Assembly (NCBI GenBank): GCA_950097015.1
Contig: CATNEN010000002.1
Span: forward strand, 4,774,001 to 4,838,000
Direction: 5' to 3'
DNA from: Macrostomum hystrix
Lineage: Eukaryota > Animalia > Platyhelminthes
DNA: 64,000 bases
The translations under genes were made by a program, and so were the position numbers. Below are positions 4,316 through 45,885 of this stretch, piece after piece. The stretch's first letter is position 1. Each line of letters opens with the position of its first letter. The notes under the pieces were generated by a model. The model searched no databases. It was not told where the DNA came from and saw only the letters and a program-made list of their open reading frames with translations.

Positions 4316-7300
4316 TCAGGGTGGTCCGTCGGTCGGTTCCGCCGCGCGATCTTCCTCGCCATAGGCTGGGAAGAAATCAGCTCGGCCGGTATCCCGGAGG
4401 AAGTGGGCGAGCTGTGGGATATTCTCGGGCGAGCAGGCTTCGGCAAGAGTCGGTGCCGGCCCGAGGTGCTTTAGCCTAGCCCGGGTGAAAGCCGGGCAGT
4501 GGCAGATGAAATGCTCGGCGTTTTCACGGCCGGAGCAGCAGAAGGGACACGTTTCCTCAGGCACGTGGCCTTGGAGGTAGCGGTGTCTGGTGAAGCAGCC
4601 ATGTCTCGAAAGGGCCATGGTGACTGCTCTCAGGTCTCTGCGGTTTAGCCTGAGTAAGGCCTTACGCAGGTTTCTAGAGGGGGTTGGCACCGCAGCCCTG
4701 GACTGGCGACAGTTCAGGGTGCTAGACCACCTCCTCCGGTGCTGGGTCTCCATCCAGTGGTTGATGCTGGAGTTGACAACGGAGATGGGGATCGGGGATT
4801 CCGGGCCCGGGCCCATCAGGGAGCTGGCTGCTCCAGCCTTTGCAAGCTGGTCCGCCATCTCATTCCCTGTGAGCCCGGCGTGCCCAGGGATCCACATCAG
4901 CTCCACCTTGTTAGACTGCGCCAAACCGTTTAACTGGGTGTTGCAGTCCAAGGTGGTTCTGGAGCGAGAGGTGCAGCGACTGAGGGCCTTGAGGGCTGCT
5001 TGACTGTCGGAGTGAAAGAAGATCCTCCGACCAGCCAGCTGCCTCTGGCGCAGCTCAGCCGCACAGAAACTGATGGCGAGCATTTCGTTTTGGAAAACGC
5101 TAGAGCTCTTGCCACAGTATTGGGAGTGGGTCCAGAGGACCTCGCCACCCGAGGCGACGCACACCCCGAATCCCGATTTACCGTTCATCAGGGAGCCGTC
5201 AGTGTAACAATGGACTGCGGGGTCATCCCAGCAGTCCTTTACCTCATTGCGAGGGAAGATGCTGACTTTGTACCTGTGGCTCCGGAGTAAAGTAGCCGGG
5301 GCCCCGTCCGAAAGGACGGTGAGCCCTCCGCACTCGCCCAGAGTTTTCAGGCAGAGGTCAGAGTGGGGCAGAAGGGAGCGCTTCGAGAAGGCTCGCGAAT
5401 TCTGGAAGGATACACCCGCATCAAGAAGACGACGGGTGGACTTTGCTGCTTCCCCCTTGACGAAAATGTCAATGGGTGTAGCGTTGAGGAAAGCATTCAT
5501 GCCTTCGAAGGGAGTGGAGGGTGGGGCGCCCAGCGTCATACGACAGGCTCTGCCCTGCACCCTATATAGCGCCTCCAGGTTTTTCTGGATGCTCATGGCA
5601 CTGGCCCAGATGAGGCCAGCGTAAGCGACTGACGGTCTAATGATCGCCGTGTAAATCCACCAAAGGTTTTTGGGGGTTAGCCCCCAAGTGGTGCCCACGG
5701 CTCGCCTGACTTGCGCCAGAATGGCCAGGGCCCTCTTGGCCTTTGTGGTGATGTGCGGGGTCCAGTTAAGCCTATGGTCTAGCAGGAGACCAAGGCACCG
5801 GACCTGCTTTTCCATGGCAATATTCTTGCCATAGAGAGTCAGAGGCTCAATGGTCCAGCGCAGTCTGCTGGTAAACATAACCGCAACGGTCTTGGACTCA
5901 GAGAGTCGGAGCCCGCATTGGTCCGCCCAGCGCACCGCCCTGTTGATAAAGCCCTGAATGAGGTCCCTGGTGGTTTCCGCCGAGGGGCCCGCGCAGATGG
6001 CGGTCACATCGTCTGCATATCCCACCTTCAGGACTGGGTCAGGCCGAGTGCTTTTTAGCAGCTCATCCATGACGAGATTCCACAGCAGTGGGGTGAGGAC
6101 GCCGCCTTGGGGCCCTCCTTTTAGGACAGGTGCCGAGAGCACCCTGCCTTCGAGGTGGGCCACCACGTGGCGATTCCGGATCATGTACATGACCCAGCGG
6201 ACGAGGTGGGGGTGAGTGGCCCTGGAAACCAGGGCCTTCTCAAAGGCTTCGAAAATAACGCTATCGAAGGCCCCCTCAATATCAAGGAAAACAGCCAGGG
6301 CAAAACCGCTGCCCAGCACTGCCTTCTCGAGAGTCTCCACAATGCAGTGGAGGGCGCTCTCCGTGGACCGGCCCGCCCGAAAGGCGTGCTGGTTTGGTGA
6401 GAGCGGGGCCCGCCCTAGCTCTACAGTAAGAAGGCGCCAGAGCACCAGTCTTTCCATGAGCTTGAGGCAGGTGGAAGTCAAACTTATCGGGCGATAAGAC
6501 TTGACCGAGCGATAGTCGCCTTTGGCGGGCTTCGGGATGAAGACGACCCGGGCTTCATGCCACCGCGCTGGTACGTAGCCCAACACGATGCAGGCCCGTA
6601 GAAGTCTGCAGAGGAGATGAAGGAAGCGGCCATTTTTACCGCTTCATGCAGAAGGCCGGATATATACCATCTGGCCTAGGTGCTTTAAAAGGATTGAATG
6701 ACTTAGCCGCGCGAACGATGCGGTCATTTGTAACGAGTGACTGAGCCAGGCCCTGACCTCCACGCGAGTGGTCGTCTGGGCCGAAGTGCGCCGGTACACT
6801 CGGGAAGAAGTGCCCTAGCATAAGCTCGAGCGTTTCCTCCGGGCGCTCCGTGATCAAGCCGTCCGGCTTTTTGATCGAAGATAGCTTGGAGAAGCGGTCG
6901 TTGGTGAGCGCCTTTACCACGCGGGCCGTGGGCCGCGAGCCCTCAAGCCCTTCGCAGTATTGTCGCCACTTGTCCGCTTTTGCCCTTCTGACCCGGCCCT
7001 TAAACTCATGGATGGCGCGAGTATAGGCCTCTTTGTCATCAGGGTCGTGCGAGGTTTTCAGCTTCCTCTGGAGAGCCTTAGCTCGGCGTCTTAGGACTCC
7101 GAGCTCGGGGTTCCACCAGGGGGCCGATTTTTTGCCTTTGTAGGCTTTGAGCGGGCAAGCCATTTCGTAGGCATCTGTGATGGCGCCGCCCAGCAGGGCA
7201 GCCACTCCATCCAGGTCCTGCGTGGTTTCCATGGCCATGGAGGGGTCAGAATCCCGAAGGCCCTCATGCAGCTTTTGGCTGAACGCGGGCCAGTCGGTGT

Positions 7301-8018
7301 TTCTGACATTACGCCTCCAAATAGGCTTTTGCTTCTTATCGGGGGTGCCGATGTTGAAGCGGATGAAACGGTGGTCCGAGAGCGAGCTTTCGGTCTCCCA
7401 CACCTCCCACCCCAGCACCCTTGGGAGGATGCCGGGTGAGGCCAGGGTGACGTCAAGCACCTCAGCCCACCGCCCATTGTCGAAAGTGGGCGTGTTGCCC
7501 ACATTGCAGAAGTTAAGAGGCGTGCCGCTGACGAAGGCCAGGAGCTCTTCGCCGCGGTCATTGATTTTTGAGCTACCCCAGTGGGTGTGATGCGAGTTAA
7601 CATCTCCCGCGAGGAGCAGCTCGAAGTTTCGTGCCCTGGCGAATTCACAGAGGGCGACGAGGGTATCGCCGACCACGGGGGCGTCGCCTGCCAGGTAGGC
7701 GGATGCCACGAGGGTCAACTTGTTAGGCACAATGTGTGCAGATTGGATGACGCAGATGTCCCCGTTAGAGAGATCGGGTCTCATCCACGCATTTAAGGCT
7801 TTTGCGGCATAGATCAGTGATCTAGGGCGGACAGAGTCTGCCATGCAGAAGCAGTCATAGCCAGCAGGAGTGTTGCTTGGCTTGTTCTTTGATAACCAGG
7901 GCTCCTGCACAAGTACAAGGCCCGGCATCATGCGCTCTGTCGTGCGCATCAGATTGACTGATGCTGCCACGCAGTGCTGGGTGTTAACTTGCAGACATGA
8001 AATTCCGGGGATCATCAT
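4316..8018 (-). pseudogene. ORF2 of the LOA-like LINE (APE endonuclease, RT, RNase H, C-terminal CCHC), frameshifted near 6590-6650
   Basis: APE motifs LVQEPW, GDVNSHH, SDHRFI; RT motifs YRPISLTS, PQGG, GYADD; RNase H CYTDGS...WIPGHAGLTGNEMAD; CPFC...HFICHC. The frame changes between PDGIYPA and RFLHLLCRLLRACIVLGYVP. Confidence 0.9.
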
Positions 8019-8030
8019 GTAGGCAGAGGT

Positions 8031-9231
8031 CTACTTGGAGGGGGACCCAGCCAGAAGGCGGTCCTCCTCCTCCGGGTCGATGTCGGTAGCCATGGGCTCC
8101 TCCGTGCCCAGGCCCCGAGCCGGAGACGGGAACTCGACGGGGTCAGCCGCCCAGTCCCCACCCCCGGCCCCGAGCCCAGGCCCAGAGTCGCCCTCAACTG
8201 GAGCCGACACCGCTCCCTGGGCCGTGGGAGGGGCGCTCGAAGGGCCCTGCTCGATGGAGCTGGGCACCTCTGAGGCCTCCCCCGTAGCCCTTGGTTGCGG
8301 CGCCTGCCCCGGTGGGCCACCGCGCATCTCAGCGCGCAGCTGGGCCATCTTGGCGGTTCGCACCACCTCGGAGGCCCGCTGGAGAAGGCCCCGGCGCTTT
8401 GTGACACGCGCGGGGCGACGCTCAGAGCTGCCAGCGATGGCACGCTCTGGCCTTTTTTGGCGGGACGACTGGGCCCTGCCCCCAGTCCCAGCCTTGGGGT
8501 CCGAGGACCCTTCATTGGCCGACACAGTGGTGGGCCCGGTCTGACCCCGGGTTTTGTCGGCATCGTAGGCGAAGATTTTGGTCTTCCACAGACCGATGCA
8601 GACGTTTGCGCCATCTGGGTAACGGCGTGTCCATTGGTCGGACAGGCCCAGAATGGCGGTGAAGCCGGTGCCGTCGGGGCGCAGGATCGTGCGGTGCACG
8701 ATTAGGCCCGCTGTCGGAAGCTCCCGGTTCATCGAGATGGGGCCCATGCGGAGGTCCTCAGCGCTAGTGACGACGCTTTTCGCCGGGACGAAAATGCGAT
8801 GTCTTTTGGTCTGCGGTGGCTCGTTCTCCCGGAGGAAGGCGAGGTCGGCCGCCCAGCTCTGCGTGGGCAACAGCTCTAGGAGCCGCCGCCCTGACTCCGC
8901 ATCTCCGGGCCAGACAACAAAACACGAGTCCCTGGTAGCATTCGCACCGACCGCCAAGGGCTCGCCTTTCAGTTGTAGTTGCCACAGCATAGCGTCTATG
9001 CTGCGGCAGATGTCGCTGAGCCGCTCGCCGCTCAGCCGTTTGCCATCCTTGCCGGTAACCACGATGGCAGGTTGCCTGCGTGCGATGTTGGCATAGGTGG
9101 CCCGTGGTCCCGGGCCCTTTCCTGCGGCGTCCCCACTCTCGGGATTTGCGTCGGCGGTGGGCACGGGGCCCTCCGCCTCCGCTCCTCCTTCGAGCCGAGC
9201 CGCCGGCCGGATGGGCGCTGGGACCTCCCCT
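8031..9231 (-). CDS. ORF1 (gag-like, 5'-truncated) of the LOA-like LINE
   Basis: Long open frame ending 13 nt before the ORF2 ATG; contains a TYANIA motif typical of LINE ORF1; no zinc knuckle seen. Confidence 0.7.
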
Positions 9232-11690: not shown

Positions 11691-12628
11691 CCTGATTGTA
11701 ACCAAAGTTGGTTATAGAAAAGATAACATGTTGAAGGTTGATGTTTAAGGTTTATAGCCAACTTAAGTTAATTAGGCCTATGGCTTTTAATTTCACATAG
11801 TATTTTTCTGTAGACTCCTAAATAAAAGAAAAATCACCAAATTTTACCCTTACTATATTTTTATTTTTCCACATTACCTCACCTTTGTTTATAATCACTT
11901 TCATGCATATACAGTGATATACTCCAATGAAATTATTGTAAGCCAAAGCTAGTAATATTTGTTGTTAAAACGAATTCCCCGAAGTACTGGGAGCGGGTCA
12001 GTTCCGAGGAACTCTGCCGCTATATTTTTTAATATATTTAATCGAAATTCATTTAAAATATACAAGCAATTCGATATAGATATTTTATACGAATATTGAA
12101 AATAAAAATAAAACAATAAAACAAAAATTCAATATTTGGGCACGCATTGGAAGATAAAAGGGGAGAAATATACAAAGGGAATCCCGCACAAAGAAGGGAT
12201 GTAATAAAAAAAGGAAATCTAAAAAGCATGCATGCAAGATATTTGTGAGCGCAATTAAAAGCAATTAGAATATTTGTTAGCAAAAATAGAAAATAAAAGT
12301 AGTAAATTAAAACATGAAATGCGAATTAAAAACATTTCTGGGCAATGCGGTACATATTACGTATAAAAATAGGCAAAAGTAAAAAGAAAGGATTTATTTG
12401 GGAATTAAAAACTCTGGTGTGTAAAGAGCTAGCAGTTTATGAGCAAATAGCAACATAACAAAAGCAAAAAGTACTTTTTAGGCAATAAAATCACGTTAAT
12501 CAGTTTGAAAAAACGTAAAGAATATAATATCATAGCAGCTGAGCACTGCTCACCAGCCCTCTTGAGCTCAGGCAGCTATTTGAGTTTCATTTTGGCTTTC
12601 TTTCAGGGCCATAGGTGTCAGAGACTGC

Positions 12629-15409
12629 TCAACCCTGGATTTGGAGTCGGTTCTGCCTGTTGATTTGTCCCCGCCTCAGGGTAGCCCACAGGACTTTGAG
12701 GATGGGGACTCGGCCCGGAGCGCGAGGCAGCTCCGGCTCGATGTGGAAGCCGTGCAGCCGAGCTGCTCTCATCTTGAGCAGCCAGGCCACACCGAGCTGT
12801 TTGACTCTGGCCGAGAGCATTGGCATGCCGGTCATTTTGTGAAGGTACTCGGTGCTCAGGTAGGAAGGCACACCGTAGCAGATTCGCAGAGCAAGGTTCT
12901 GGATCTTTTGTAGCTTGATCTGGTTGGTGACGCAGATCAGAGTCAAGATTGGGGCGCCGTAGGTGAGAGCGCTCTCACCGTAGGCCCTGTACAGCATCTT
13001 GAGAGTGACGCTGCTCAGTTTGGTGATCTTGGCAATGCGGCACAGGGACATGACAATGGCCCTGCACGTATTCGCCATGTTGTCGACGTGTTTGTTCAAA
13101 CAAAGATTGGCGTCGAGGAGGACACCTAGAAATTTCACTTCCTGACAGTAGGGGACCACCGTCTGCCCCAGCTGCAGTTTAGGTCGCAAGTCGGCGCGAG
13201 CTGTCGGCTTGTAGTTGAAGGCGATGGCCTTGCTCTTGTCGGCATTCAGTCTGATGCCTTGCTTGCCGCACCACTCCCAGACTTGTCTGAGGTAGCTCTG
13301 AAGGCATGTCTGCAGACCAGCAAAGGTGTCTGCGGAGGCCCAGATGGCCATGTCGTCTGCAAATTGACTGCGTTTCACGTTTGGATTTTCAGGAATCGGC
13401 ATTGTGCTGACGTACAGCAGGTACAGGAGAGGACTCAAGATGCCTCGCTGAGGTACGCCAGCTAGGATTCTGATCAGCTCACTAAGCGAGTTGTTGACTC
13501 GCACCTGGATGTACCTGTTCCTGAGGTAGTCAGACAGGATGCGCATCAGCATCGAAGGAAGGCCAGCGTTGAGCATGCGGCTCCTAAGCATGTCGTGCCA
13601 GGCAGAGTCAAAGGCCGCCTCTACATCAAGGAAGACTGCAGCGGCCCTCTTTGCTTTGCACTTTGCGACCATCATGTCCTGCACCAGTCGGCACAGGTTG
13701 TCGTAGGTGGAGTGGACTTTGCGATAAGCGCATTGGTCATCGCCAAGAATGTTCTTGTCTTCAAGGAATTTGGAGAGTCTCTTGGCAATCAGCTTCTCAA
13801 ACACCTTGCCTAAGCAAGAGGTCAGGCTGATTGGCCTGTACGAGTTTGGATTGTCTGGCGGTTTGTCAGGCTTCGGGATCATTGTCACCACAGCTTTCTT
13901 CCAAGCGCTGGGGAAGATCCCTTGACTGAAGCAGGCGTTAAAGAGTCTGGTGATCCTGGTGATCGCCACGCCTTCAAGGCCGAGTTTGAGCACTCGATTG
14001 GGAATCTTATCCAGCCCGGGTGCTCCATCAGGCTTGAGGTGCTCAAGCTCCCACACTGTGTCGGCTACAGTGAATGCGGCTTCAAGCGGGTGAGTGGCGA
14101 TGCCATTGATGTCGGCCGGAATCGGATAGAAAGCGATGAACTTGGCCACTTCGGCCACGTCCTGTTTGAGCTGCTCGCAAGTGGATGGGACTGGGCGCAT
14201 CTTTGAGTCCAGAGTGGCCGCGAGAAGGTTCGCTTTCTCCAGATCAGTGTGCGCACTGGTTTGACCCGAAGTGAGGGTTGGGATGGAGCTGGGCTTGAAC
14301 TTGCCCATCAGCTTCCTGGTGTCATGCCAGAAGTTCTTGTTCTTGCTGTTCTCGACAACATTCTCACACAGCTTGGTGAGCTTGCCGCTCTGGAAGGAAG
14401 TGATTTCCCTTTTGATCCTGTTGGCCATTTGGTTGGCCAGCCTTTTAAAGTTTTCATCCCGAGTGCTGTTGAAGAGTCGTCTGAGTCGTCGGCGCTCTTT
14501 AATCAGCTCAAGGATGTGCTTGGGCAGAGCATTTCGGCCACCACAGTCTGGCACAGTCGACTCAATGACCGTGTGGATGGCCTTTGTGATGAGCTCGACC
14601 TCGGCGTCGATTTGCTGAGCACTCGATAGGCGAGTCGGCTGGTCAGGAAGAAGGGCTTCACTAATCCTCAGCCTGAACTGATCCCAGTCGGTTTTGGAAA
14701 AGTTTTTCGGCTTAGCGGGACCTGCCCACTTTGCCGACTGAATGTTGAGGGTGAGGATGATTGGCAGGTGGTCGCTGTCTAGGTCGGGACCTACTGCAAA
14801 GTCCTGCACAAAGGGCAGAAAGTCTTCCGTGGCCAGGCCAAGGTCCAAGACATTCCTGGAAGTGACGCCGTTCTTGGTGGCGATTCTGGTGAACTGGCCA
14901 ACTTGATTGAGGATGGTGGGCGAGGCCAGACCTTCAGAGAGCCAGTCGTACAGCTCATGGCCAGCCCTGTTGTTGCTGCTGTCACCGCCAAGGAAGCGGT
15001 GTCTGGCATTGAGGTCGCCAAGGAGAACACTGCGTCTGCGCGAGACCAGGCTCTTGAGCAGGTTCAGGTTCAGGTGGTAAGGTGACGGAGACCTGTACAC
15101 CAGAGCCAGATTAAAGTCGGCACCGTGAGAGTTGTCAGACAGGCTAACGGTGCAGGAGATGGCTTCATGGTTCACATTGTCGTAGTGCAAGCGAACATTG
15201 GTGAGTTTGACGCGCGGTGAGTGAGCAAGGAGCAAGCCGCGTCTGACATGCGGAGTGTCGTATCGGATGATGGAGTAGCCAGGGATCTGGACCGTGTGCG
15301 AACTCTTGAGAATGGTTTCAGAGAAGAGAGCAATGTCTATCTCTTGACTAATGACCCATTGGGTGAGTTCTCTGCTTTTCGGGTGAAACCCTCTGCAGTT
15401 GAGGTGCAT
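12629..15409 (-). CDS. ORF2 of the Jockey-like LINE (APE + RT, no RNase H)
   Basis: MHLNCRGF, ALFSET, GDLNARH, DSDHLP, YRPISLTS, VPQRG (variant of PQG), QFADD. The frame is open upstream to 15559 and overlaps the end of ORF1. Confidence 0.9.
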   Translation of the reverse strand: MHLNCRGFHPKSRELTQWVISQEIDIALFSETILKSSHTVQIPGYSIIRYDTPHVRRGLLLAHSPRVKLTNVRLHYDNVNHEAISCTVSLSDNSHGADFNLALVYRSPSPYHLNLNLLKSLVSRRRSVLLGDLNARHRFLGGDSSNNRAGHELYDWLSEGLASPTILNQVGQFTRIATKNGVTSRNVLDLGLATEDFLPFVQDFAVGPDLDSDHLPIILTLNIQSAKWAGPAKPKNFSKTDWDQFRLRISEALLPDQPTRLSSAQQIDAEVELITKAIHTVIESTVPDCGGRNALPKHILELIKERRRLRRLFNSTRDENFKRLANQMANRIKREITSFQSGKLTKLCENVVENSKNKNFWHDTRKLMGKFKPSSIPTLTSGQTSAHTDLEKANLLAATLDSKMRPVPSTCEQLKQDVAEVAKFIAFYPIPADINGIATHPLEAAFTVADTVWELEHLKPDGAPGLDKIPNRVLKLGLEGVAITRITRLFNACFSQGIFPSAWKKAVVTMIPKPDKPPDNPNSYRPISLTSCLGKVFEKLIAKRLSKFLEDKNILGDDQCAYRKVHSTYDNLCRLVQDMMVAKCKAKRAAAVFLDVEAAFDSAWHDMLRSRMLNAGLPSMLMRILSDYLRNRYIQVRVNNSLSELIRILAGVPQRGILSPLLYLLYVSTMPIPENPNVKRSQFADDMAIWASADTFAGLQTCLQSYLRQVWEWCGKQGIRLNADKSKAIAFNYKPTARADLRPKLQLGQTVVPYCQEVKFLGVLLDANLCLNKHVDNMANTCRAIVMSLCRIAKITKLSSVTLKMLYRAYGESALTYGAPILTLICVTNQIKLQKIQNLALRICYGVPSYLSTEYLHKMTGMPMLSARVKQLGVAWLLKMRAARLHGFHIEPELPRAPGRVPILKVLWATLRRGQINRQNRLQIQG

Positions 15410-15476
15410 AATTTTCAGACCCGTTGTCTGGGTATTAGGGTTCCCATTTAAATTAAGGAATTTACAGTTTTCTGGT

Positions 15477-17195
15477 TTAGCTGCCTGGGCCCACGACCCC
15501 GGTGGCGGCGGAGGCCATGCCAGACACGTCCTGGAGGACAGCCCGCACAATGTCCTCAACCATTTTACTGGTCGATTCTACCGTGAGGAGCTCACCAGGC
15601 GGCCTGGACAGGGCCCGCACAATCACCTGGGTCAGAGAGCGGGTGATCAGGGGCAACAGCATGCTCACCATCTGCTTCAAGTCAGTCTGCTGCTGCTGCT
15701 GCTGCTGTGGCTCACTGCCAGCGTCCAGGGAGGGTGTAGCCTCATTGGCGCTCGTGCACCTGGCGCTGACAGTCTCGGCGGCCGGTCGGCTCCTGGCATC
15801 ATCGGTGCTGATGAACAGCGGCCGGATGGCGGCATTGACGGGCACGTTGCGGCGGCCTTGGCGGATCAGCCAGCCACTGTCCGAAGCGTCGGACACGTCG
15901 GCGGGCGCACTCGAGGCAGGCGGGGCATCCGTAGTCGCGGCTTCCGCTGCTCGCGCCGCAGCAGCTTTGGCCTCAGCTGCCGCCTTCGTCGCCTTGGCGT
16001 GCTCTTCCTGCGCAACAGTGCAGGCTCGGCTGGTCGTGCGGTGCTGACCACCGCATTTGGAGCATGTCGCCGGGCCTTCGTGCTGGCAGTCCTTCCAGGC
16101 ATGCGAGCAGCCGCAGATTCGGCATCGCAGCTCCGCCTGGCACTGGGCCGCACGGTGGCCAAACTGCTGGCACTGCAGGGCGCGGACCGGCTCGTCGGTG
16201 CGGCTCTCTTCGCAGCTGAACTTCAGGAAGTCAGTGCAGATGCCTTCGCGAAGACACTGGTCGAATGTCGCTCTCGACTTTGTAAAAATGCGCATGTACC
16301 GGGTGGCCTGCCCGGATGCTCGCGCACGGATCCGATGCACACTCGTGATGTCGAGCTTCAAGGACTCGCGGAGCATGCTGGCGAATTCGGCCTCCGTGAA
16401 GGAAAACGGCACGTCGAGCGCTACAATGGTGAGCAGTGGCTGCTGCTGTACTCTGTCAGCGCCAGTCCGGTTGTCCAGCGGCCTCGATCGGGCTGGTCGA
16501 CGCTCGACACGGTGGCCGAGGAGGCTGTCCTGACGCAGAGCACCGCCTAGGAAGACGTTTTAATCCCGCTCAGTGGCCGGGAATACTAGGTAGGCGGGCT
16601 GATTGGCCATTTCGGCTGTGTTGACGGCACGGGCATCGCCGGCAAAGTTGGCCTGCAGCCAGGTGATGAAGGCCATCAGCTTGCCCGCCGCGTTTCGGTG
16701 AACTTCAAAGACCACCGGTGGAATGGCAGCTGGGGTCTTCGCAATGGAGCGCGGGCCGAAGCCACCTGCGCATAGGGCCGCGCTGTCGCAGCCTGGGTCG
16801 TTGAAGCAGCCGCCGCCGCCGACGCCGCCGACGAACCCGTCACCGCGGTCGCCGACGCTGCCGCCGCACCAGCCGCCGCACCTCGGCCGCCGCCGCCACC
16901 TCGCGTGCCTCGCTGTCTGCCGCCGCCGCCACCGCGGCTGCCTCGCTGCTGACCGCCGCCGCCGCGCTGACCACGTGCGCCGCGCTGACCGCCGCCGCCG
17001 CGCTCTGCCTGCTGGTCCTGCTCGATTCTCCTTCAGCTCAACCCCGCTGTAGGTGTACTCCGGGCCGATCCAGAAGACTCGGCGCTGCTCGTGTGGGCGA
17101 TGACGGAAGGCGAGTGGGAGCACGTCTTCTATCAGGCGCTGGTAGATCTGGTCAGCGACCTCGCCAAGAAAGTAGGGCGCATAGACGATGGTGCA
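15477..17195 (-). pseudogene. ORF1 of the Jockey-like LINE: AlkB-like N-terminal segment, RGG/Ala-rich linker, gag-like region with three zinc knuckles; in-frame stop at 16560-16562
   Basis: The ORFs 16560-17123 and 15477-16412 share one frame separated by a single TAA (ATERD*NVFLGG). Knuckles: xALQCQQFGHRAAQC (first Cys lost), CRICGCSHAWKDC, CSKCGGQHRTTSRAC. The +1 frame over ~16750-17020 reads an RGG-rich stretch ending PYAQVAS. Confidence 0.75.
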
Positions 17196-20100
17196 GTGTG
17201 TGTGTGTGTTGGTTCAGATCCCTCGCTAGGCATACGGGGGGCGCGCCAGCGCGCCCGACGCCTCGACGAAGGCCCGCACCCCTTCTGGGTCGTTCTGCAG
17301 TGGGGACATAGAGCCGTTGATAGCCTCTGGGATGTGAAGCCGGCGCTCCTCCGCCCACCTGGGGCAGTCTAACAGGAAATGCCGGGTGTCTTCTTCGGGG
17401 GCATTGCAGTGTGGGCAGGCAGCGGTTGGGTCGCGGCCCCAACGATGCCGGGTGGCCTGCAGGAAGGGCGCCCGGTTGGCCCGAAGCTGGTACAGCGCCA
17501 CCTCGGCCGTCCGCGGCCAGCCTGTCCGGTGGATGAACTGCGCTCCGCCGCAGAGCCTGTGGGGGTGGTCCGCCGGAACCAGCTGATTATACTCAGCTAA
17601 TTCGGCCGCTCGTCCCTGGCGACGGAGGGCGGCCGACACGGGGACTGGCTGGGGGTCTTGCTGCATGGCGGACCCTCTCCGGGCCAGCTCATCGGCGGCC
17701 TCGTTAAGCGCAAGGCCTGCATGCCCTGGGATCCAGATGACCGTTGGCCTGTGCTCGCTGGCCAGCTGTTGGAGCAGGATCGCGGCTTGCGCGGTGGCGT
17801 GGTCTTGCAGGCACTTGGTCGAGGACTGTAGCCGCTGGAACAGGGCTCGTGAGTCGAACAGCAGCCAGATCGCCGAGCTCGGCTTCCCACGAAGGAGACC
17901 GAGGGCTGCCTCGAGCCCCGCCGCCGCCGCGGCCGCTTCTGAAGTGGTCGAACTGGTCCACCGTCCGGTCGGGATACTGCCCTTGACGTCGGGGCCGATA
18001 GCTTGACGCCGGATGATGTAGCCTCCTCCGCCATTTCTGAAGCCTTCTTCCGCCGCCCCGTCTGTCCAGACTTCGAGGTACGGCGGGTCGCTCCGGCGAA
18101 GGGAGTCCAGCAGTTCTAAGGCCCTCGCGCGTCGGACCTCCGGGGGCTCCTCGCGCCCAGCATCCGCCGCAGCGAAGCGGGCCGAGTGATGAGGGGTCCA
18201 CGGCCGGTGCAGGCAGGAGAGCGGAACGCACCCCTCAATGTTCCGAACGTGACATCCCGCCTCCTCCAGGGCCGCAAGCGCCGTCTCTCTCCAGCACCCG
18301 CGGGTCCCGCCCCCTCTCGACCGCAGTCTCGTCGTGTTCGGCGGGGCGTCGGTTAGCTTCCGCAGCGGGTGGCCCTCGCTGAACTGGCGGCATCGCAGGT
18401 AGAGCTCAGCCGCCCGAATCCGGCAAATGATGTCCAGGGGCTGTAGCCCGGCGTCCGCGATCAGCGCAGCAGCCCGGGCACCGGGACTGACACCGGTGAT
18501 GGCCCGGGCCGCGGCGTAATTCATCGACTCCAACCGCTCCCGGTGGGTACGAGCCAGAAAAGGCCACCACACCTCCGCCGCGTACAGCCCCGCCGGGCGA
18601 ACGTAGCCGCAGTAGAGCCGACGAAGCGTATCAGCGTCAGCTCCCCACCGGCGGGAAGCCACAGCCCGCAGGGCGTTGAGCCGGCTCCGCATGGCAGCCA
18701 GCGCGCGACGGGCCTGCTCGGCGAAGGTGACCTGGGAGTCCACGAACACCCCCAGGATGCGCGCCTCCTTCCGGCAGCTGATCGTCTGCCCACCGACCTG
18801 GAGCTGAACAGAGTTGCGGAAGGCCTCGGTATTCTCCACGGGCTGGGTACTCACCAGCAGGGCCTCGGTCTTGTTTGGGGCCAGTTCGAAGTGATGCTGC
18901 TGGCACCAGGTTTCTGCCGCTTCCAGCGCTTGTTGCATGTTCTCCGCCGCTGCCGCCGCAGTGCCCGCCGACGTCTTGATGGACAGGTCATCGGCGTATT
19001 GCAGCGGCTTACAGAGCGGGGCGGCGGACTGGATGGCGGCTGGCAGGGTACAGGTCGCAATGTTGAATAGCAGCGGGGACAACGGACTGCCTTGCGGGAC
19101 TCCCTCCTTCAGGATCTTGGGCCGGCTCATGCTATCAACCCAGCGCACTCGAGCTCTCCGGTCAGCCAGAAACGCGCGGATCCAGCGCAGCCACCGTCCC
19201 GGGGCGCTCGCTCGAGCCAGTTGCCGCAGCACCCCGAGGCGCCAGGTTCGGTCAAAAGCAGCGAAGAAGTCGATCGCTGCCACCAGGGTCCTCGTCATCG
19301 GCCGCGTCTGCAGGTCGTCAAAGGCCGGCTGGGCCAGCTGCGCTAGGGCGTCAACCGTGCTGCGGCTGGCGCGAAACCCGGACTGCGCGTCCGGGAGCAG
19401 GCCGATCTCCTCCGCCCAGGCCGCCAGCCTGCGCTGCACCATCGCTTCTAACGTCTTCCCGACACAGCTGAGCAGCGAGACAGGTCGGAAGGATGCCGGG
19501 TCGCTCTTGGGCTTGCCCTTCTTGGCAATGGGCGTGATGATGGCCGTGCGCCAGCCCGATGGAACCTTGCCCTCCAACCAGCTCCGGTTGAGCAGGGAAA
19601 GCAGGGCGACCCGTCCGATCGACGGGAGGTTTTGAAGAAAAGCCGGGAGAACTCCGTCTTGACCCGGCGCCTTCCCCTCGATCTCCCTCAGAACGACGTC
19701 CAGGTGGAACGGGGTGGACCGCAGGTCGTCCGTCTCGTTCTGCAGAGCGCGGCGGACCTCCCTCCTGGCAGCCTGCTGATCTGTCTTCGGAACGCGGAGT
19801 CGGCTTGCCTCCGCATAGGTCGCCATCGCCATGTCTGCCTTCTCCCGGTCAGAGGTCGCGGTCTTGTTGCCCTTGCGGAGCGGGGTGTCAGGGAGCGGCT
19901 CATGCGCTCGGCCATCGAGGGCCCTGATGGTGTTCCAGACCTTGTTGTCTGGGGACCTGGCCGACAGCTCCGCGACGAAACCTTGCCAGGACTCGGTCTT
20001 CGCCTGTTGGTACACTCGGTCGGCTTGGTCGCGGGCAGCGCGGTACCTCGCCGCGGCTTCCAAGTCCCCTGGCGCGGCTCTGGCTGCCGCTAAGGCGCCG

Positions 20101-21765
20101 CGAGTGGCGCCCTGGGCCTGTCTGCAACGCTCGTCCCACCAGCTCTTGGCCTTCTTAACTCTGCCCTTGGGGATGCAGCTCGCCGCGTCCAGGATCCTGC
20201 GGCAGAAGTCTGCATTGGCGGCCTCCACGGACCGAAAGCCGTCCGCCGACCAGCCCAGGAAAAAATCACCCGCCCGCGTCGCGTAGGTCGGCCAGTCCGC
20301 CCGTCGCAGGTTGAAGCCAGCTGGGCGGCGGCGCTCCTGGGTTTGGGTGAAGGCGATGGTCAGCAGCAGAGGAAGGTGGTCCGACCCCATGGCGTCCCCC
20401 ACGCGCCAGCTGATCCGGCTGGACCAGACAGCACTGCAGAGCGACACGTCGGGCGCCGACTCACCACCCCCCGGGCTCACTCTAGTGGCACTGCCGTCGT
20501 TGAGCGCCATCCAGCCGTGGTCGCTCAGCCAATCGTCGAGCTCGCTTCCAGGGGGGTCCGGATCAGCATTCGGGTCCCAGCTACCGTGAGCGTTGAGGTC
20601 GCCCATCAGCAGCCAGTGCCCATCGGTGGGCCAGCCGTTGGTGTGTAGGGCCCCGTCTCGGTCGTCCGCGTCGGAGTGCCGTACAGGTGGGCGGTAGAGG
20701 TTGGTGAGGTGCAGCGGCTTGGACTTGTCCCCGAACAGACGGATGGTCAGCTGCTCCAGGGCCGCATTGACGGGGGTCCGCAGACCCGCCTCCACCTCTT
20801 CATGGGCCAGGCCTTGTTTGACCAGAGTGAGCAGGCCTCCATGGTGACCGCCACCCCCCGGTGGACGACCCGGTCGCGGCGGTGGACGGTGTAACCGCGG
20901 AGCTTGGGTGTGGGCTCTCTCTCGGTGAGGTTAGATTCCTGCAGAAGGGCGATGTCTATTTTGTTTTCCTCCAGCAGCCGTTCAAGTGCCGGTCGACGCG
21001 CCTGTAGCCCGTTGAGGTTCCACTGCAGGACACGGAGATCGGCCTGGATAGGACCGGGGTTCGGCTCAACATCCCCCGACAACAGAACCCGGCGGCGAGA
21101 CCAGTCGGGGTTGGCCTGCCACCCTCCCAAAAACCCGCCAGCGGGTTGGGGTGCGGACATCGAAGCGACATCCGGGGAGCCGGAGCATTTGGCACAGAAC
21201 GCATCTGTGACACCTGTCCCCACGTGAAGGGAGCTCCGTTTGACAGGCACGATGGTGCAGTCGCCCGCGTAGGTCGTCTTCTGACACTCGCTGTAGTCCG
21301 GCTCGTCAGGGAAGACGATTTGGGACACATCAGCCTCGGACTGTACAGCGGTGGGCTTTGGGATAGTCGTTGGGGCATTTGCCATAGACTCGGATGCCGT
21401 TGGCGCTGGCGCAGGTGCTGCCGCAGCCTCAGTGTGTTGAGCCGCCGTCTCGGCTGCCTCGGCTTCATCGACGGACATCTCGTTTATTTCAGCGGTCGCG
21501 GGGGCCGCAGTCCCTGCTGGGGGCTCGTCTTCGACGATGACAAGCCGACCTTCTGGTGAACTGAGCGAGCCGCGGTCTTGGGCGCTGTTGGCCGGTTCTG
21601 AGGTCTCGCTGGCCGGCGTCGGAGTCGACATCAGCGCTGTCGCGACCTTCGGCTGCAGCTTTCGACTGGCGTCTTCGGTGCGGCCGTACCGATGCTCGAG
21701 CGAGGGGCGGCCGTCGTGTTTTTTTGCGGTGGCGCGAATCGCAGCCATATGGCGTGATTTCTCAC
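17196..21765 (-). mobile_element. Ingi-like (I-group) LINE nested in the Jockey-like LINE, 7-bp TSD, (CA)n tail
   Basis: TSD tggtgca at 17189-17195 and 21766-21772; (tg)n at 17196-17209 on + is the (CA)n tail; single long ORF. Confidence 0.85.
17226..21748 (-). CDS. Single polyprotein of the Ingi-like LINE: leader, 2A-like motif, APE, RT, RNase H, CCHC; one 1-nt frameshift in the C6 run at 20854-20859
   Basis: ATG at 21748 (MAAIRATAKK); LLSGDVEPNPGP; LQWNLNGL/LLQES; MGDLNAH; SDHLP; FRPVSLLS; PQGS; LQYADD; VWTDGA...WIPGHAGL; CPHC...HFLLDC. Adding one G restores HRGGGGHHGGLLTLVK. Confidence 0.88.
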
Positions 21766-22918
21766 TGGTGCAAGGTAAACAAAATAAGCAAAGGGGGCAG
21801 GTGGCACACAAAGTGCGCACTCAAGGGAGGGGGTGGGGGACTGCTAGACTAAAACTAAAACTACAAGTACAGGGGGAGAGAGAAACTGCAAAAATAAAAC
21901 TAAAACAGGTGAGAATGAACAAGGAGCACTATAGGGAGCTTACTGGTGTACTTTAAAAGTACCCCCTTCTAGGAATGGGGTTGCACAAATCAAGGAACAC
22001 TCAATGAATGTACCTCTCCACGGAAATCTTTAGTAAAAGGCGAAAGATTTAAGCGTGGAATGAAGAGAAACCAGCTAGTAATATTTAAAATAGCAAAATA
22101 AGTTCTGGTTTATTTTTAATTCTATCCAGATGTTAAAAGTTAAGCATATAAAAATTTTATAGCAAACTTAATGTTCTGGAACAATTGATTTGGTGCTATT
22201 GTTGTACCTGTGGTAGCGTGGCACACACAATTGGTAAAATGACCAAGACAGGAACTAGATTCTGAGAGGATCTTTACCGGCCTCAACGCTGGTGCTTCCT
22301 AGCAGAGGAACAATCCGGTAGTCAGGCTTCGAATGTCAAGTTCTCTCGTGCTTTCCTCTAATCGGACTACGTCCTATCTGCACTCACAGATCTTATGCTT
22401 GATCGGGCGGTACACCAAGCTTCAAAATGCAGTGTACGGCCTAGATCAACAATAAGCTTCTAAGATCTTAGAGACAAGGTAAATGAATGCTAACACAAAC
22501 GGTAAGCACAAACGCAAACGCATCAAGAAAATTCAGTCCACACAGTGCCATCAATATAAAGAAATAGTGCTACCATGATACCAACACCATCTCAAGGATT
22601 CGTCGGACTGTGCTCTACTTATAGTAGGAGCATTTGAGCGTTGTTCTGCCAGTCTTCTTCCGAACTTAAGCGATTGCACCATGGTGTGCAATGTGACTCA
22701 GTGCGCACACAGAGCTGGAACGAGAGAGAGAAAGTGGAGGGGGTGGCGAGCGGAGGTGACAGTGCACGGGAAACACTAACTACCTACACCCCAGCCCTCC
22801 CACAGACCCAGAACAGCCTGACTCACAGATTGCCTGGAGGCTGCTCAGCAGTCTACAGCACATCACTATGCTTCAACAGAAATAATGATAATAACTCAGA
22901 GATGACAAACACCAACTA

Positions 22919-42781: not shown

Positions 42782-42855
42782 CGCCTCCAGGTGGGCTCGA
42801 ACCACCAACCTTTCGGTTAACAGCCGAATGCGCTAGCCGATTGCGCCACGGAGGC
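42782..42855 (-). tRNA. tRNA-Asn(GTT): tRNA-Asn(GTT)
   Basis: GCCTCCGTGGCGCAATCGGCTAGCGCATTCGGCTGTTAACCGAAAGGTTGGTGGTTCGAGCCCACCTGGAGGCG; cloverleaf; T-run terminator; A at position 26. Confidence 0.92.
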
Positions 42856-43656
42856 CTCCGCTGGGATCGGAGGCGATTTGAATCTTTCAATTTTGTCAAA
42901 GATCATGCACTGATCGCAGCAGGTGTTTTATCTGCTACAGTCTGTAATATGGGCAACAAAAAGTAAAGCACTGCTAACTGCTTAGCATAAGTAGGGCTTG
43001 AGATTTGAATGTGTGGATCACTGCTGGGCAAATGTTTGCATTGTGTGTGGCTGTGTTTGATGAAAGATGGCAAAGAAATTAGTCAAGTCGATTATTTCAG
43101 TATTATTAATTTCCCGTGTGTATAAAATAATACTTTTTACAAAAATAATCACTAAGCCTAGCTGACTCTAGAACTACATGTTAGACTACATCGTTAATTA
43201 GGTGATTGTGTTTTGCTATTTCATGCAACTTTTACTGAGAATTAATGTTCTACAGCCTTATATTTACTGCGCTCAGTGATGAGTCCTAGAGACTCCCACT
43301 TCGTTACGGTGTCAGCGAATATGTCAAAGGGCTGCTTCCTTTGACTGGCTGAATCTTCGCACGCAGCTTGTCGACGACCATCGAAATGAGGAAAGTTCTG
43401 AAATATTTTTTTCTCAGCCCAGATGGTGTGCTACAAGTGGCAGAGATGGTTGTGATGGTGGATGATGTGATAGGCACATTCTACTCGTAAATTTGATAAG
43501 TTAACATTTTAGTCATCAGCTTATTTTACTTATTTCTTAATCACCTTTGCTACAGTGCCTCTCTGTCTCTCTTTCTTAGTAACTCACATTCTTGCCTATC
43601 ACCTCGCTCCATCACCCACTCCATTTGTAGGTGCATCACATGCCAAAAATGGTGCT

Positions 43657-43673
43657 CGCCTCCAGGTGGGCTC

Positions 43674-43710
<37 letters not shown>

Positions 43711-43730
43711 GCCGATTGCGCCACGGAGGC
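43657..43730 (-). tRNA. tRNA-Asn(GTT): tRNA-Asn(GTT)
   Basis: Consensus copy with anticodon GTT, GTTCGAG T-loop and TTTTT terminator. Confidence 0.95.
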
Positions 43731-44633
43731 CTCGGAGTGATTAAAGGTGCGTTGGCCACTTTTAGACTCCCAAAATCAAATATGCCATATTTACAATGCA
43801 ACCAGTGCGTCCAAGTTCAAGATTTTCTGCCCCGCTTGGCTGTTTAATCTGCCGCGATTCGTAGAACATTTTCTACGAAAATGGTGTCACTGTGCAAGAA
43901 ACTTTCAAGACGCCTGACATTTGTCAAGTTCAAATTTTAAGAAGTCACTCGCTGAAGAGGGATCAACCACTCTAGTACTCGTAGCAACCCCACCAGGTGG
44001 ACGATTAGATTTTGGCAATCTGCGTTCAGGAGGAGTTTGAGAAGTATTTCAGTGTGGGCTCATGAACTGCCTATTGTTTTTTGAATTTTTAAGCTTCGTT
44101 TTTCTTCTTCCATGTCATTAGTCAACACGCGACCGGCCAGAGCCAGTGCAGCAGCACCAAGCCCCTCAACCTCAGTCTAGTTGAGGTGGGTTTGGTGCAC
44201 CCAGCCGGCTTAGAGCCTCCCGAGGCCCCTCTATCCTGCGCTCTTTTGTTTGGTATAAATATACGCGCAATGCGGCAAAAGGTTTCGCTGCCATTTCATC
44301 TCGTAAACAAAAAGGCCTTCCGCCTAACGTCCGCAGCCCGTGTGCTGGGGGATCGACCCGGCCTATGGCGCCAACTGACTGTCGATTGTTGCCTTCAATT
44401 TCGGCGCCTGTCTAGTGCACCTGCTGTTTAGGGCCCCAGCTCCCGCTGCCTCGGCGCGAGCTCCTTCGGTCTTCGGCGCATTACTGGTGCACACAGCAGC
44501 AGATCAAACAACCGAGCGGATATGTCCTTTATTCTCCTGACAGAATGCACTCAGCCTAGCTTTGTGTGCTCAACGTCTCCAAAGAATCTGAAAATATCTG
44601 AAAATAAGCGATACGACTTCAATCCCAGCGGAG

Positions 44634-44656
44634 GCCTCCGTGGCGCAATCGGCTAA

Positions 44657-44690
<34 letters not shown>

Positions 44691-44707
44691 GAGCCCACCT
44701 GGAGGCG
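44634..44707 (+). tRNA. tRNA-Asn(GTT): tRNA-Asn(GTT), D-stem mismatch variant
   Basis: As consensus but GCTAACGC instead of GCTAGCGC, breaking one D-stem pair. Confidence 0.85.
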
Positions 44708-45066
44708 ATCACCATTTTTTGCTATCCCAAATCTTGCTTAACAATGATTTGTTGCTGATGCTCATGGCGATGTCACGCACTTCACGCCAAAAGCTTGCAA
44801 GCTTGCATACTCAAGGATGCGATGCGAGAAAAGGAGTATGGGAGAAAAGTCTCTTGTTCAAATCTGCTCGCAAAACAAACAGATAAGACAAAAGAGGTTT
44901 TACAATGATGAGACAGTGGCTATAAGACTATCGATTGTCCCCTCTCTATTACCCTCTCCACAACAATTTCCATCACCCTCTCCATCTCCATAGATAAGAA
45001 ATAAGTTTTTGTTGACATGCGGAAGGCCAACCAAGCGATATTGAGCAGTTTCTAAAAAATGGTGCT

Positions 45067-45083
45067 CGCCTCCAGGTGGGCTC

Positions 45084-45120
<37 letters not shown>

Positions 45121-45140
45121 GCCGATTGCGCCACGGAGGC
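45067..45140 (-). tRNA. tRNA-Asn(GTT): tRNA-Asn(GTT)
   Basis: Consensus copy with terminator. Confidence 0.95.
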
Positions 45141-45828
45141 CTCGGGGTGATCGGAGGTTTGTTGGCCACTTTCAGACTTCCAAAATCAAATATTCTATAT
45201 TTACAATGCAACCAGTGCGTCCAAGTTCAAGATTCTCTGCCCTGCTTCGCAGTTTAAGACACCTGTGAGATTTCAAGACACGTCATATCAACGTACTGAT
45301 ATGTTAGCGTCAGCGTCAAGTTTAACTTTTAAGAAGTCACTCGTTGATATGTCAGTTGTCTTGAAATCCTACAGTCTGACTGTGACTATGACAAGGACTC
45401 ATCAATGAGCACAAAAATATAAAACTGTAGAACTTTTATTCTCACCATTTTTAATGAAATTTGAAAACAAACACTAAACTATACATTCTTAATTCCAGAA
45501 TCATTCAGTTCAAAGACGATCTATCAAAATATGTTAATTTTGTGCTTTTGTACAAAATCATTGACTACACAGTAAAGCAATCATGATTAAATTATTGACT
45601 TGACTATTTTAGTCGCCATATTTCATCAAACTCAGCCGCCCACACAATCCAAAGCTTGCCTAGCTGTGATCACACATTTCTCAAGCGTTTCTCATGCTTA
45701 CCATTTAGTATAGTGCTCATTGTTTCCCAATGCAAGGTACAGACTGTAGCAGATAAAACACCTGCTGTGATCAGTGCATGTTCTTTGACAAATATGAAAA
45801 TTTCCGATCGTCTCCGATCCCAGCGGAG

Positions 45829-45848
45829 GCCTCCGTGGCGCAATCGGC

Positions 45849-45885
<37 letters not shown>

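What the first reader, a model, noticed from the sequence alone, without database searches (positions are those of the whole stretch)
17022..17195. AlkB-like (ALKBH2/3-type) segment at the front of a LINE ORF1
Seen: reading the minus strand in the ORF1 frame up to the nested-insertion TSD gives CTIVYAPYFLGEVADQIYQRLIEDVLPLAFRHRPHEQRRVFWIGPEYTYSGVELKEN; the ORF track shows only its second half. It lies inside the element's 14-bp TSDs, between the 5' UTR and the gag-like region. Established: YxPxFL..AD..L...RxxxWxGxxYxYSG is the N-terminal nucleotide-recognition part of AlkB-family 2OG-Fe(II) demethylases, and some RNA viruses carry AlkB domains. The catalytic HxD...H...R half is absent here; an RGG-rich linker follows instead. 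Inference: either a LINE family carrying an AlkB domain that could repair or demethylate its own RNA (this copy deleted), a lid-only RNA-binding module, or a captured host mRNA fragment.
Basis: partly seen in the sequence, partly recalled or inferred. Interest (0 to 1): 0.78.

Follow-up and report, generated by a model that had tools for sequence, protein, structure and literature searches.

The report
Dead LINE copy's AlkB demethylase remnant
The 57-residue segment is the front end of a complete ALKBH3-type nucleic-acid demethylase that a family of flatworm jumping genes (LINEs) carries inside its RNA-coating ORF1 protein; this copy is dead, but intact, conserved copies suggest that methylated bases limit LINE copying.

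Summary
It is a remnant of an AlkB domain, not chance.

- **The family.** The genome, a Macrostomum-type flatworm and not human, holds 15 copies of this LINE. Ten have an open ORF1 frame of 921-928 codons (893 aa from the ATG): N-terminal region, complete AlkB domain, RGG linker, gag-like part with CCHC knuckles. ORF2 follows with endonuclease and RT.
- **The enzyme.** It passes Pfam 2OG-FeII_Oxy_2 (E 1e-22). Its closest solved relative is human ALKBH3, by sequence (E 2e-25) and by fold (TM 0.84). The iron and 2-oxoglutarate residues are kept.
- **Selection.** AlkB is the most constrained part of ORF1, with dN/dS 0.07 between subfamilies and 0.14 against M. lignano.
- **The window copy.** It is dead. 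A private 469-nt deletion removed the catalytic half and shifted the frame, so the RGG linker is read out of frame. A second LINE is nested in it, and there is a stop codon.
- **Wider picture.** At least eight divergent AlkB-LINE families exist here. Their AlkB domains form one clade, apart from the host ALKBH3.
- **5' end.** The element starts with a U5 snRNA sequence.

No enzyme activity has been measured. I found no paper describing AlkB in a LINE. Earlier notes of this scan report the same fusion on other pieces of this genome.

The parts
22073..22086 (-). 5' target-site duplication of the outer LINE (AAATATTACTAGCT)
   Evidence: Same 14-mer at 11947-11960
21961..22076 (-). U5 snRNA sequence forming the first ~112 nt of the transposed unit (first ~5 nt of U5 missing)
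   Evidence: Rfam RF00020, 72 bits. It lies inside the TSD. Same arrangement in the C25 and C3 copies
21749..21960 (-). 5' UTR
   Evidence: Alignment to intact copies; ATG read
21249..21748 (-). ORF1 start (ATG at 21748-21746) and poorly conserved N-terminal region, cut off from the rest by the nested LINE
   Evidence: 90-93% identical to intact copies
17198..21248 (-). Nested, 5'-truncated LINE of another family (ORF2 17226-20795 with endonuclease, RT, RNase H and zf-RVT; (CA)n tail); TSD core TGCACCATCGT at 21249-21261 and 17185-17197
   Evidence: Pfam; junction sequences; gap in the alignment to intact copies
17026..17195 (-). AlkB remnant: ORF1 residues 163-219 of 893. These are the first strand, the helix and three lid strands. 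All jelly-roll core strands and all catalytic residues are missing
   Evidence: secondary structure of the model; 55/57 identical to an intact copy
17018..17025 (-). Deletion junction: 8-nt filler (TCGAGCAG) in place of 469 nt (ORF1 residues 220-375, including H262, D264, H319, R331, R337)
   Evidence: no other copy shares the junction
16730..17017 (-). RGG-linker DNA, out of frame with the AlkB remnant; a second 1-nt shift near 16730 restores the frame
15477..16729 (-). gag-like region with CCHC knuckles and ORF1 C-terminus; in-frame TAA at 16560-16562
   Evidence: tblastn to the intact ORF1 (one search gives the family architecture)
12629..15559 (-). ORF2 (endonuclease plus reverse transcriptase, no RNase H), still open for 976 codons
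   Evidence: Pfam on the intact homologue; 97% identical to C12/C3 copies
11961..12628 (-). 3' UTR ending in ...TTTTAACAAC(AA)
11947..11960 (-). 3' target-site duplication (AAATATTACTAGCT)

Best explanation
Window 17022-17195 is the surviving N-terminal quarter of an AlkB (ALKBH3-type Fe(II)/2-oxoglutarate) demethylase domain. That domain is a regular, selected part of the ORF1 protein of a flatworm LINE family.

Intact elements run, 5' to 3': U5 snRNA head, 5' UTR, ORF1, ORF2, 3' UTR. ORF1 holds a variable N-terminal region, the AlkB domain, an RGG linker, a gag-like part, CCHC knuckles and a C-terminal tail. ORF2 holds an AP-endonuclease and a reverse transcriptase.

The window copy is a roughly 3%-diverged dispersed insertion with a 14-bp TSD. 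After insertion it lost the catalytic half of AlkB through a 469-nt deletion, took in a second LINE, and acquired frameshifts and a stop codon. It makes no AlkB protein.

Inferred mechanism for the intact family: the AlkB domain is tethered to the element's RNA by the RGG, gag-like and CCHC parts. From there it oxidatively removes base methylation that blocks reverse transcriptase (1-methyladenine and 3-methylcytosine type) from the LINE RNA template, or from the single-stranded cDNA or target DNA. This would raise the yield of full-length copies.

What is shown and what is not:
- Shown: domain identity, fold, catalytic residues, fusion architecture, selection, copy anatomy.
- Inferred: substrate, action in cis, benefit to retrotransposition.
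For: - **Peptide and copies:**
- **Full ORF1 and ORF2 in intact copies:**. Pfam PF13532 at E 1.1e-22; ORF2 has Exo_endo_phos and RVT_1.
- **Closest solved relatives:** PDB sequence search gives human ALKBH3 at E 2e-25 and ALKBH2 at 7e-18, with the WH-x-D, Q-H and R-x-x-L-T-F-R motifs aligned.
- **Fold:** AlphaFold model with pLDDT 93 and pTM 0.89. Foldseek top hits are ALKBH3 (TM 0.84) and then ALKBH2. ALKBH5, ALKBH6, ALKBH8 and E. coli AlkB score much weaker.
- **Selection between subfamilies a and b:** AlkB dN/dS 0.07, against 0.13-0.34 for the other ORF1 segments.
- **Selection against M. lignano:** AlkB is 83% identical with dN/dS 0.14, against 45% and 0.42 for the N-terminal region.
- **Other families:** at least 8 further divergent LINE families in the genome have the same AlkB-ORF1 layout and keep the catalytic motifs.
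- **One LINE clade:** 19 LINE AlkB domains form one clade (SH-aLRT 97), apart from the host ALKBH3-like exon, which sits with animal ALKBH3 (99).
- **Same architecture elsewhere:** in M. lignano and in unnamed Logan assemblies.
- **Window copy damage:**
- **Established background:** AlkB enzymes reverse 1-meA and 3-meC in RNA and DNA, and plant RNA viruses carry such domains (PMC2553587). Base modifications impede reverse transcriptases, and AlkB treatment is used to relieve this (PMC12140624).
Against: - No enzymatic activity, substrate, expression or retrotransposition data exist for any copy.
- ALKBH3-type enzymes also act on tRNA and ssDNA, so the target could be something other than the element's own RNA.
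- The tree was built with the quick method and is unrooted. It does not resolve where the LINE domain came from.
- dN/dS between dispersed copies mixes selection in active lineages with neutral decay after insertion.
- My literature check covers only open-access text. Repbase and Dfam could not be consulted.
Confidence: 0.88

Rival explanations
1. The family's AlkB domain is an eraser of regulatory marks. It strips m6A (or m1A) that the host places on LINE transcripts to flag them for decay or silencing, rather than clearing blocks to reverse transcription.
For: An orchid Ty3/Gypsy lineage acquired an ALKBH5-like m6A demethylase with measured activity (PMC9289625). m6A writers and erasers modulate mammalian L1 (PMC7873242, listed).
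Against: The domain is ALKBH3/ALKBH2-like, not ALKBH5- or FTO-like, by sequence and by fold. In the tree it is far from the m6A erasers. ALKBH3-type enzymes mainly remove 1-meA and 3-meC (PMC2553587).
Confidence: 0.2
2. The AlkB domain works on DNA. It repairs alkylated single-stranded target DNA or cDNA during target-primed reverse transcription, or it benefits the host as an extra repair enzyme.
For: The best structural matches are ALKBH3 bound to ssDNA that contains 3mC. ALKBH2 and ALKBH3 are DNA repair enzymes.
Against: The domain is fused to RGG and CCHC RNA-binding parts in the RNA-coating protein. Nothing here tells RNA from ssDNA.
Confidence: 0.12
3. The truncated segment in the window is a functional lid-only RNA-binding module.
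For: The lid strands and helix are retained with 55/57 identity to intact copies.
Against: The deletion junction is unique to this copy and shifts the frame. The segment is cut off from its ATG by a 4-kb nested LINE, and a stop follows. No other copy or family shows a lid-only form that is conserved.
Confidence: 0.01
4. The segment is a fragment of host ALKBH2/3 mRNA picked up by this one LINE copy.
For: None beyond the family resemblance.
Against: All 15 copies carry it. The host ALKBH3-like exon is only about 41% identical and groups with animal ALKBH3, away from the LINE clade. The M. lignano orthologous LINE has the segment too.
Confidence: 0.01

Closest known systems
Human ALKBH3 (PDB 2IUW, 8JNR, 8JNK, 9NCZ), with ALKBH2 next
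   Same: Same fold (TM 0.84, 34% identity). The HxD...H iron triad and the RxxxxxR 2-oxoglutarate motif align without large gaps.
   Different: Here the domain is internal to an 893-aa retrotransposon ORF1 protein, not a free-standing cellular enzyme. It is not the host orthologue, which sits in a separate clade. Activity is untested.
AlkB domains in the replicases of plant RNA viruses (Flexiviridae and others; PMC2553587)
   Same: A selfish RNA-based replicator carries its own AlkB domain inside a larger polyprotein. The likely role is clearing methyl lesions from its own RNA.
   Different: Those are plus-strand RNA viruses of plants with AlkB inside the replicase. Here it is an animal non-LTR retrotransposon with AlkB in the nucleic-acid-coating ORF1 protein.
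Phalaenopsis orchid Ty3/Gypsy elements with an ALKBH5-like extra ORF (PMC9289625)
   Same: A retrotransposon that encodes an AlkB-family demethylase.
   Different: That is an LTR element in a plant, with an ALKBH5-type m6A eraser in a separate ORF, acquired recently. Here it is a LINE in a flatworm, with an ALKBH3-type domain fused into ORF1. It is old: there are many families, and it is shared by two species with dS around 0.75.
snRNA-gene-targeting LINEs such as Utopia (U2; PMC4640811) and SINEs with snRNA heads (PMC4494074)
   Same: Association with a multicopy spliceosomal RNA gene. There are head-to-tail arrays at the target and probable use of the snRNA promoter.
   Different: The target or head here is U5, joined at U5 nt 48/49. 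I found no U5-specific LINE in the searchable literature. This element uses an AP-type endonuclease, whereas Utopia uses a restriction-like one.
LINE ORF1 proteins with accessory domains (esterase in CR1/L2-type elements, PHD fingers; from my own knowledge)
   Same: A modular ORF1 with an enzyme or reader domain placed in front of the nucleic-acid-binding part.
   Different: As far as I could check, an AlkB dioxygenase is not among the described ORF1 modules.

Membership tests
AlkB family, ALKBH2/3 type (Pfam PF13532) | Profile match above the curated cut-off | tested here: met
   Intact copy: 81.7 bits against a cut-off of 31.2, E 1.1e-22. The window fragment alone gives no hit.
AlkB family, ALKBH2/3 type (Pfam PF13532) | Double-stranded beta-helix fold with an N-terminal nucleotide-recognition lid | tested here: met
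   Model pLDDT 93.2. Foldseek best hits are ALKBH3 at TM 0.84 and ALKBH2 at about 0.81. The window copy keeps only the lid part.
AlkB family, ALKBH2/3 type (Pfam PF13532) | HxD...H iron triad and Arg pair that binds 2-oxoglutarate | tested here: met
   Intact copies have H262, D264, H319, R331 and R337. These are invariant across 29 aligned sequences. All are deleted in the window copy.
AlkB family, ALKBH2/3 type (Pfam PF13532) | Oxidative demethylation of 1-meA/3-meC in ssDNA or RNA | not testable with these tools
   Needs a biochemical assay.
Orthologue of animal ALKBH3 | Groups with animal ALKBH3 in a tree | tested here: not met
   LINE domains form their own clade (SH-aLRT 97). The host exon L020 groups with animal ALKBH3 (99).
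Non-LTR retrotransposon (LINE) with AP endonuclease | ORF2 with AP-endonuclease and reverse transcriptase | tested here: met
   PF03372/PF14529 and PF00078. The window ORF2 is open for 976 codons.
Non-LTR retrotransposon (LINE) with AP endonuclease | Dispersed copies flanked by variable target-site duplications, with no LTRs | tested here: met
   Three different TSDs of 14, 10-12 and 15 bp at C2, C25 and C3.
Non-LTR retrotransposon (LINE) with AP endonuclease | Assignment to a named RT clade (Jockey, CR1, etc.) | not tested
   No reference RT set was at hand. The architecture (CCHC gag-like ORF1, APE-RT, no RNase H) only suggests the Jockey/CR1 group.
Target-specific LINE of a small-RNA gene (U5) | Recurrent insertion at one position of the target gene | tested here: inconclusive
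   Nine array junctions join the 3' end to U5 nt 49 on three contigs, and the same is seen in M. lignano. Three array heads share a promoter-like motif with the stand-alone U5 gene. But three copies, the window copy among them, sit at non-U5 sites with the U5 sequence inside their TSDs.

The most novel reading that the evidence does not exclude
Macrostomid flatworm LINEs carry an active ALKBH3-type demethylase in their RNA-coating protein because base methylation (m1A/m3C type) of the RNA template or cDNA is a real, possibly host-imposed, barrier to target-primed reverse transcription. This would be a counter-defence enzyme not described for any non-LTR retrotransposon.
Probability: 0.45. Interest if true: 0.8.

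Novelty: new variant of a known kind. Interest (0 to 1): 0.68.

Why it matters
LINEs are thought to need only an RNA chaperone and an endonuclease-RT. Here the chaperone has carried a nucleic-acid demethylase through many LINE families and at least two species, under strong constraint. That points to methylated bases as a limit on reverse transcription or on the survival of retrotransposon RNA in an animal. It parallels AlkB in plant RNA viruses and in one orchid LTR element.

The idea can be tested directly in M. lignano, which is a transgenic model. It also bears on annotation: M. lignano databases list these ORF1 proteins as host 'Fe2OG dioxygenase domain-containing' proteins.

The U5 snRNA head adds a second point. 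This LINE appears to live at, and be launched from, U5 genes, a target I did not find described.

Tried and rejected
- **Pfam on the 58-aa window peptide alone:** no hit. It is too short, so the assignment had to come from paralogous copies.
- **Word-based protein search:** with the whole ORF1 (AlkB region) and with the domain alone it returned only 2 + 2 unrelated or short proteins. This was a blank of the method, not of biology, because the full HMMER scan then found the M. lignano and Logan relatives.
- **A 14-bp direct repeat at the first apparent ends of the element** (12422 and 22074): none found. The real 3' end lies further out at 11961, where the TSD is.
- **U5 as the insertion target of the window copy:** rejected. 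The U5 sequence lies inside the TSD.
- **Organism behind Logan runs SRR31628392, -403 and -434:** no paper mentions them, and there is no nucleotide similarity to this genome beyond the RT core. It stays unidentified.
- **Literature:** five searches combining AlkB or 2OG-FeII_Oxy_2 with LINE, non-LTR, ORF1 or transposable element, and U5 with non-LTR, found no description of an AlkB-bearing LINE or a U5-specific LINE.
- **Host ALKBH gene on C7:** its two exons (L026) were not joined. Host genes entered the tree as single exons only (L019, L020).

Full report
**1. The observation**

The local sequence shows the end of another LINE's ORF2 just upstream, followed by a stop, a short UTR and a (CA)n tail. 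The peptide starts right after that tail.

The genome is 220 Mb in 42 contigs. Its closest protein relatives are from Macrostomum lignano, so this is a macrostomid flatworm and not human.

The 174 nt occur 15 times in the genome at 85-100% identity. Many copies sit in head-to-tail arrays with a 6.3-6.5 kb period on contigs C29, C12 and C1.

**2. What the other copies show**

In the other copies the same reading frame starts at an ATG about 160 codons upstream. It then runs through a complete AlkB domain, an RGG-rich linker and a gag-like region with CCHC knuckles.

One intact copy (L009) has an 893-aa ORF1 from its ATG and an overlapping 979-codon ORF2.
- Pfam places 2OG-FeII_Oxy_2 (PF13532) in ORF1 at E 1.1e-22.
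- Pfam places AP-endonuclease and RVT_1 in ORF2, with no RNase H.

Of the 13 copies that retain the catalytic half, ten have open ORF1 frames of 921-928 codons.

**3. What kind of AlkB it is**

- Sequence: against all PDB sequences the best match is human ALKBH3 (E 2e-25), then ALKBH2 (about 7e-18). The WH-x-D, Q-H and R-x-x-L-T-F-R motifs align.
- Fold: a model built from 29 homologues (A1) has pLDDT 93.2 and pTM 0.89.
- Fold search: ALKBH3 comes first (TM 0.84, 34% identity), then ALKBH2. ALKBH5, ALKBH6, ALKBH8 and E. coli AlkB lie far behind.
- Catalytic residues: H262, D264, H319, R331 and R337 are invariant in the alignment.

The window fragment equals ORF1 residues 163-219. This is the first strand, the long helix and three lid strands. 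None of the jelly-roll core remains.

**4. Anatomy of the window copy (minus strand, 5' to 3')**

| Feature | Coordinates |
|---|---|
| 5' TSD AAATATTACTAGCT | 22086-22073 |
| U5 snRNA sequence (Rfam 72 bits) | 22076-21961 |
| 5' UTR | to 21749 |
| ORF1 ATG | 21748 |
| ORF1 N-terminal region | to 21249 |
| Nested 5'-truncated LINE of another family | 21248-17198 |
| AlkB remnant | 17195-17026 |
| 8-nt filler replacing 469 nt | 17025-17018 |
| RGG-linker DNA | 17017 to about 16730 |
| gag-like region, CCHC knuckles and ORF1 C-terminus | 16729-15477 |
| ORF2, still open for 976 codons | 15559-12629 |
| 3' UTR, ending ...TTTTAACAAC(AA) | 12628-11961 |
| 3' TSD, same 14-mer | 11960-11947 |

- The nested LINE has endonuclease, RT, RNase H and zf-RVT. 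Its own TSD has the core TGCACCATCGT.
- The net loss at the deletion is 461 nt. The frame continuous with the AlkB remnant therefore reads Arg-rich nonsense through the RGG-linker DNA. The true RGG frame is a different one, and a second 1-nt shift near 16730 brings the gag part back into register.
- A TAA interrupts the gag region at 16560-16562.
- No other copy matches across the deletion junction, so the deletion is private to this copy.
- The copy belongs to subfamily b and is 97.1% identical to the C12 and C3 copies over 5.1 kb.

This copy is a dead relic. The lid-only reading does not hold.

**5. Selection**

| Comparison | ORF1 segment | dN/dS | Other figures |
|---|---|---|---|
| Subfamily a vs b | AlkB | 0.07 | 21.5 synonymous vs 5.5 non-synonymous differences in 175 codons |
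| | Linker | 0.13 | |
| | gag | 0.17 | |
| | N-terminal region | 0.23-0.27 | |
| | C-terminal region | 0.34 | |
| This genome vs M. lignano orthologue, L038 | AlkB | 0.14 | 83% identical, dS 0.75 |
| | N-terminal region | 0.42 | 45% identical |
| | Linker | 0.34 | 59% identical |

The AlkB domain is therefore the best-conserved part of the front half of ORF1.

**6. Breadth**

- PF13532 hits 68 places in this genome, many inside open frames of 780-1123 codons.
- I fetched twenty of these loci. At least eight divergent families show AlkB, then gag-like, then APE-RT. Their AlkB is 36-58% identical and their ORF2 41-62% identical to this family.
- A much more distant lineage (ORF2 27% identical) also has AlkB. 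All keep the catalytic motifs.
- A full HMMER scan of 1.84 billion representatives found nine proteins at E<1e-30. These are M. lignano 'Fe2OG dioxygenase domain-containing' proteins (73% and 65% identity) and unnamed Logan assemblies.
- One Logan contig carries an 843-aa AlkB ORF1 followed by an APE-RT ORF2. It shares no nucleotide similarity with this genome beyond the RT core, so a third, unidentified organism has such elements.
- The remaining hits are AlkB proteins of about 200 aa from metagenomes and bacteria, plus animal ALKBH3.

In a 65-row tree (quick method, SH-aLRT), 19 LINE-borne domains form one clade with support 97. The host ALKBH3-like exon groups with crinoid, nemertean, bird and mammal ALKBH3 with support 99. 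The LINE domain is therefore not a recent capture of the host gene. Its donor is unresolved. Host genes entered the tree as single exons, and the two exons of the C7 gene were not joined.

**7. The U5 head**

Seven of the eight full-length U5 sequences found in the genome sit at the 5' end of this LINE. One U5 gene stands alone.

Three dispersed copies each have a different TSD that encloses U5 plus the LINE: the window copy on C2, one on C25 and one on C3. Their template RNA therefore began at or near U5 +1.

Inside arrays, the 3' end ...AACAACAA joins U5 nt 49 nine times on three contigs. In M. lignano a U5 49-117 piece follows the last array copy.

The three array heads share CACTACGAWAAYTAG about 60-75 nt upstream of U5 +1. 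The stand-alone U5 gene has AAAATTAGGT at the same distance, and the dispersed copies lack the motif.

My reading, which is inference: the element prefers the conserved U5 loop (TTTTACTAA|AGATTTCC) and rebuilds a full U5 at each insertion. Arrays thus grow at genuine U5 promoters, which also launch the transcripts. Off-target copies such as the one in the window arrive without a promoter.

**8. Mechanism**

- Shown: a complete, constrained ALKBH3-type enzyme is built into the RNA-binding ORF1 protein.
- Established: AlkB enzymes reverse 1-meA and 3-meC in RNA and ssDNA, and plant RNA viruses use them on their own genomes (PMC2553587). Modified bases hinder reverse transcriptases, and AlkB treatment is used to relieve this (PMC12140624).
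- Inferred: ORF1p-tethered AlkB clears such bases from the LINE template or cDNA.
- Rivals: erasing regulatory m6A, as in the orchid Gypsy ALKBH5-like protein (PMC9289625), or acting on DNA at the integration site.

**9. Novelty**

I found no paper describing AlkB in a non-LTR retrotransposon, or a U5-specific LINE, in the searchable library. Repbase and Dfam could not be checked.

Earlier notes of this scan report the same fusion at least eight times on other pieces of this genome. I re-derived the main points independently here. I add that in this family the U5 sequence lies inside the TSDs of dispersed copies.

Noticed in passing
window 21961-22076 (-); L009 7931-8049; L010 9197-9315; G000 C1:23711082-23711196: The LINE begins with a U5 snRNA sequence. 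Seven of the eight full-length U5 sequences found in the genome head this LINE, and only one stands alone. Array-internal junctions join the LINE 3' end to U5 nt 49.
   Followed up: yes
L009 about 8110-8125; L007 about 600-615; L040; L012 about 5015-5025: A promoter-like motif, CACTACGAWAAYTAG (AAAATTAGGT in the stand-alone gene), lies about 60-75 nt upstream of U5 +1 at the three array heads. It is absent upstream of dispersed copies. It could be the flatworm snRNA proximal element.
   Followed up: partly
window 17198-21248 (-): A nested 5'-truncated LINE of a different family (endonuclease, RT, RNase H, zf-RVT; (CA)n tail) is inserted inside the AlkB-LINE ORF1, with an 11-13 bp TSD.
   Followed up: partly
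L021, L022, L024 (G000 C1:8053349, C15:1355172, C38:14611187): A far more distant LINE lineage (ORF2 only 27% identical, no detectable gag homology) also has an AlkB domain at the front of a long ORF. Five identical 853-codon frames suggest recent activity.
   Followed up: partly
L038, L039 (M. lignano GCA_002269645.1): Public M. lignano annotation lists pieces of these LINE ORF1 proteins as host 'Fe2OG dioxygenase domain-containing protein' gene models.
   Followed up: partly
window 42782-47370: A cluster of six tRNA genes on both strands (Rfam, 60-66 bits).
   Followed up: no
window 4316-9164 (-): A GC-rich block with long minus-strand ORFs (756, 460 and 377 codons), probably another retroelement. 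Not examined.
   Followed up: no
L009 9246-9901 (G000 C29, upstream of the array): An 18-bp-period minisatellite lies just upstream of the C29 LINE array.
   Followed up: no
L035, L037 (Logan SRR31628392, SRR31628403): AlkB-ORF1 LINEs in sequencing runs of an unidentified organism, with about 30% ORF1 identity to this family and no U5 at their 5' ends.
   Followed up: partly
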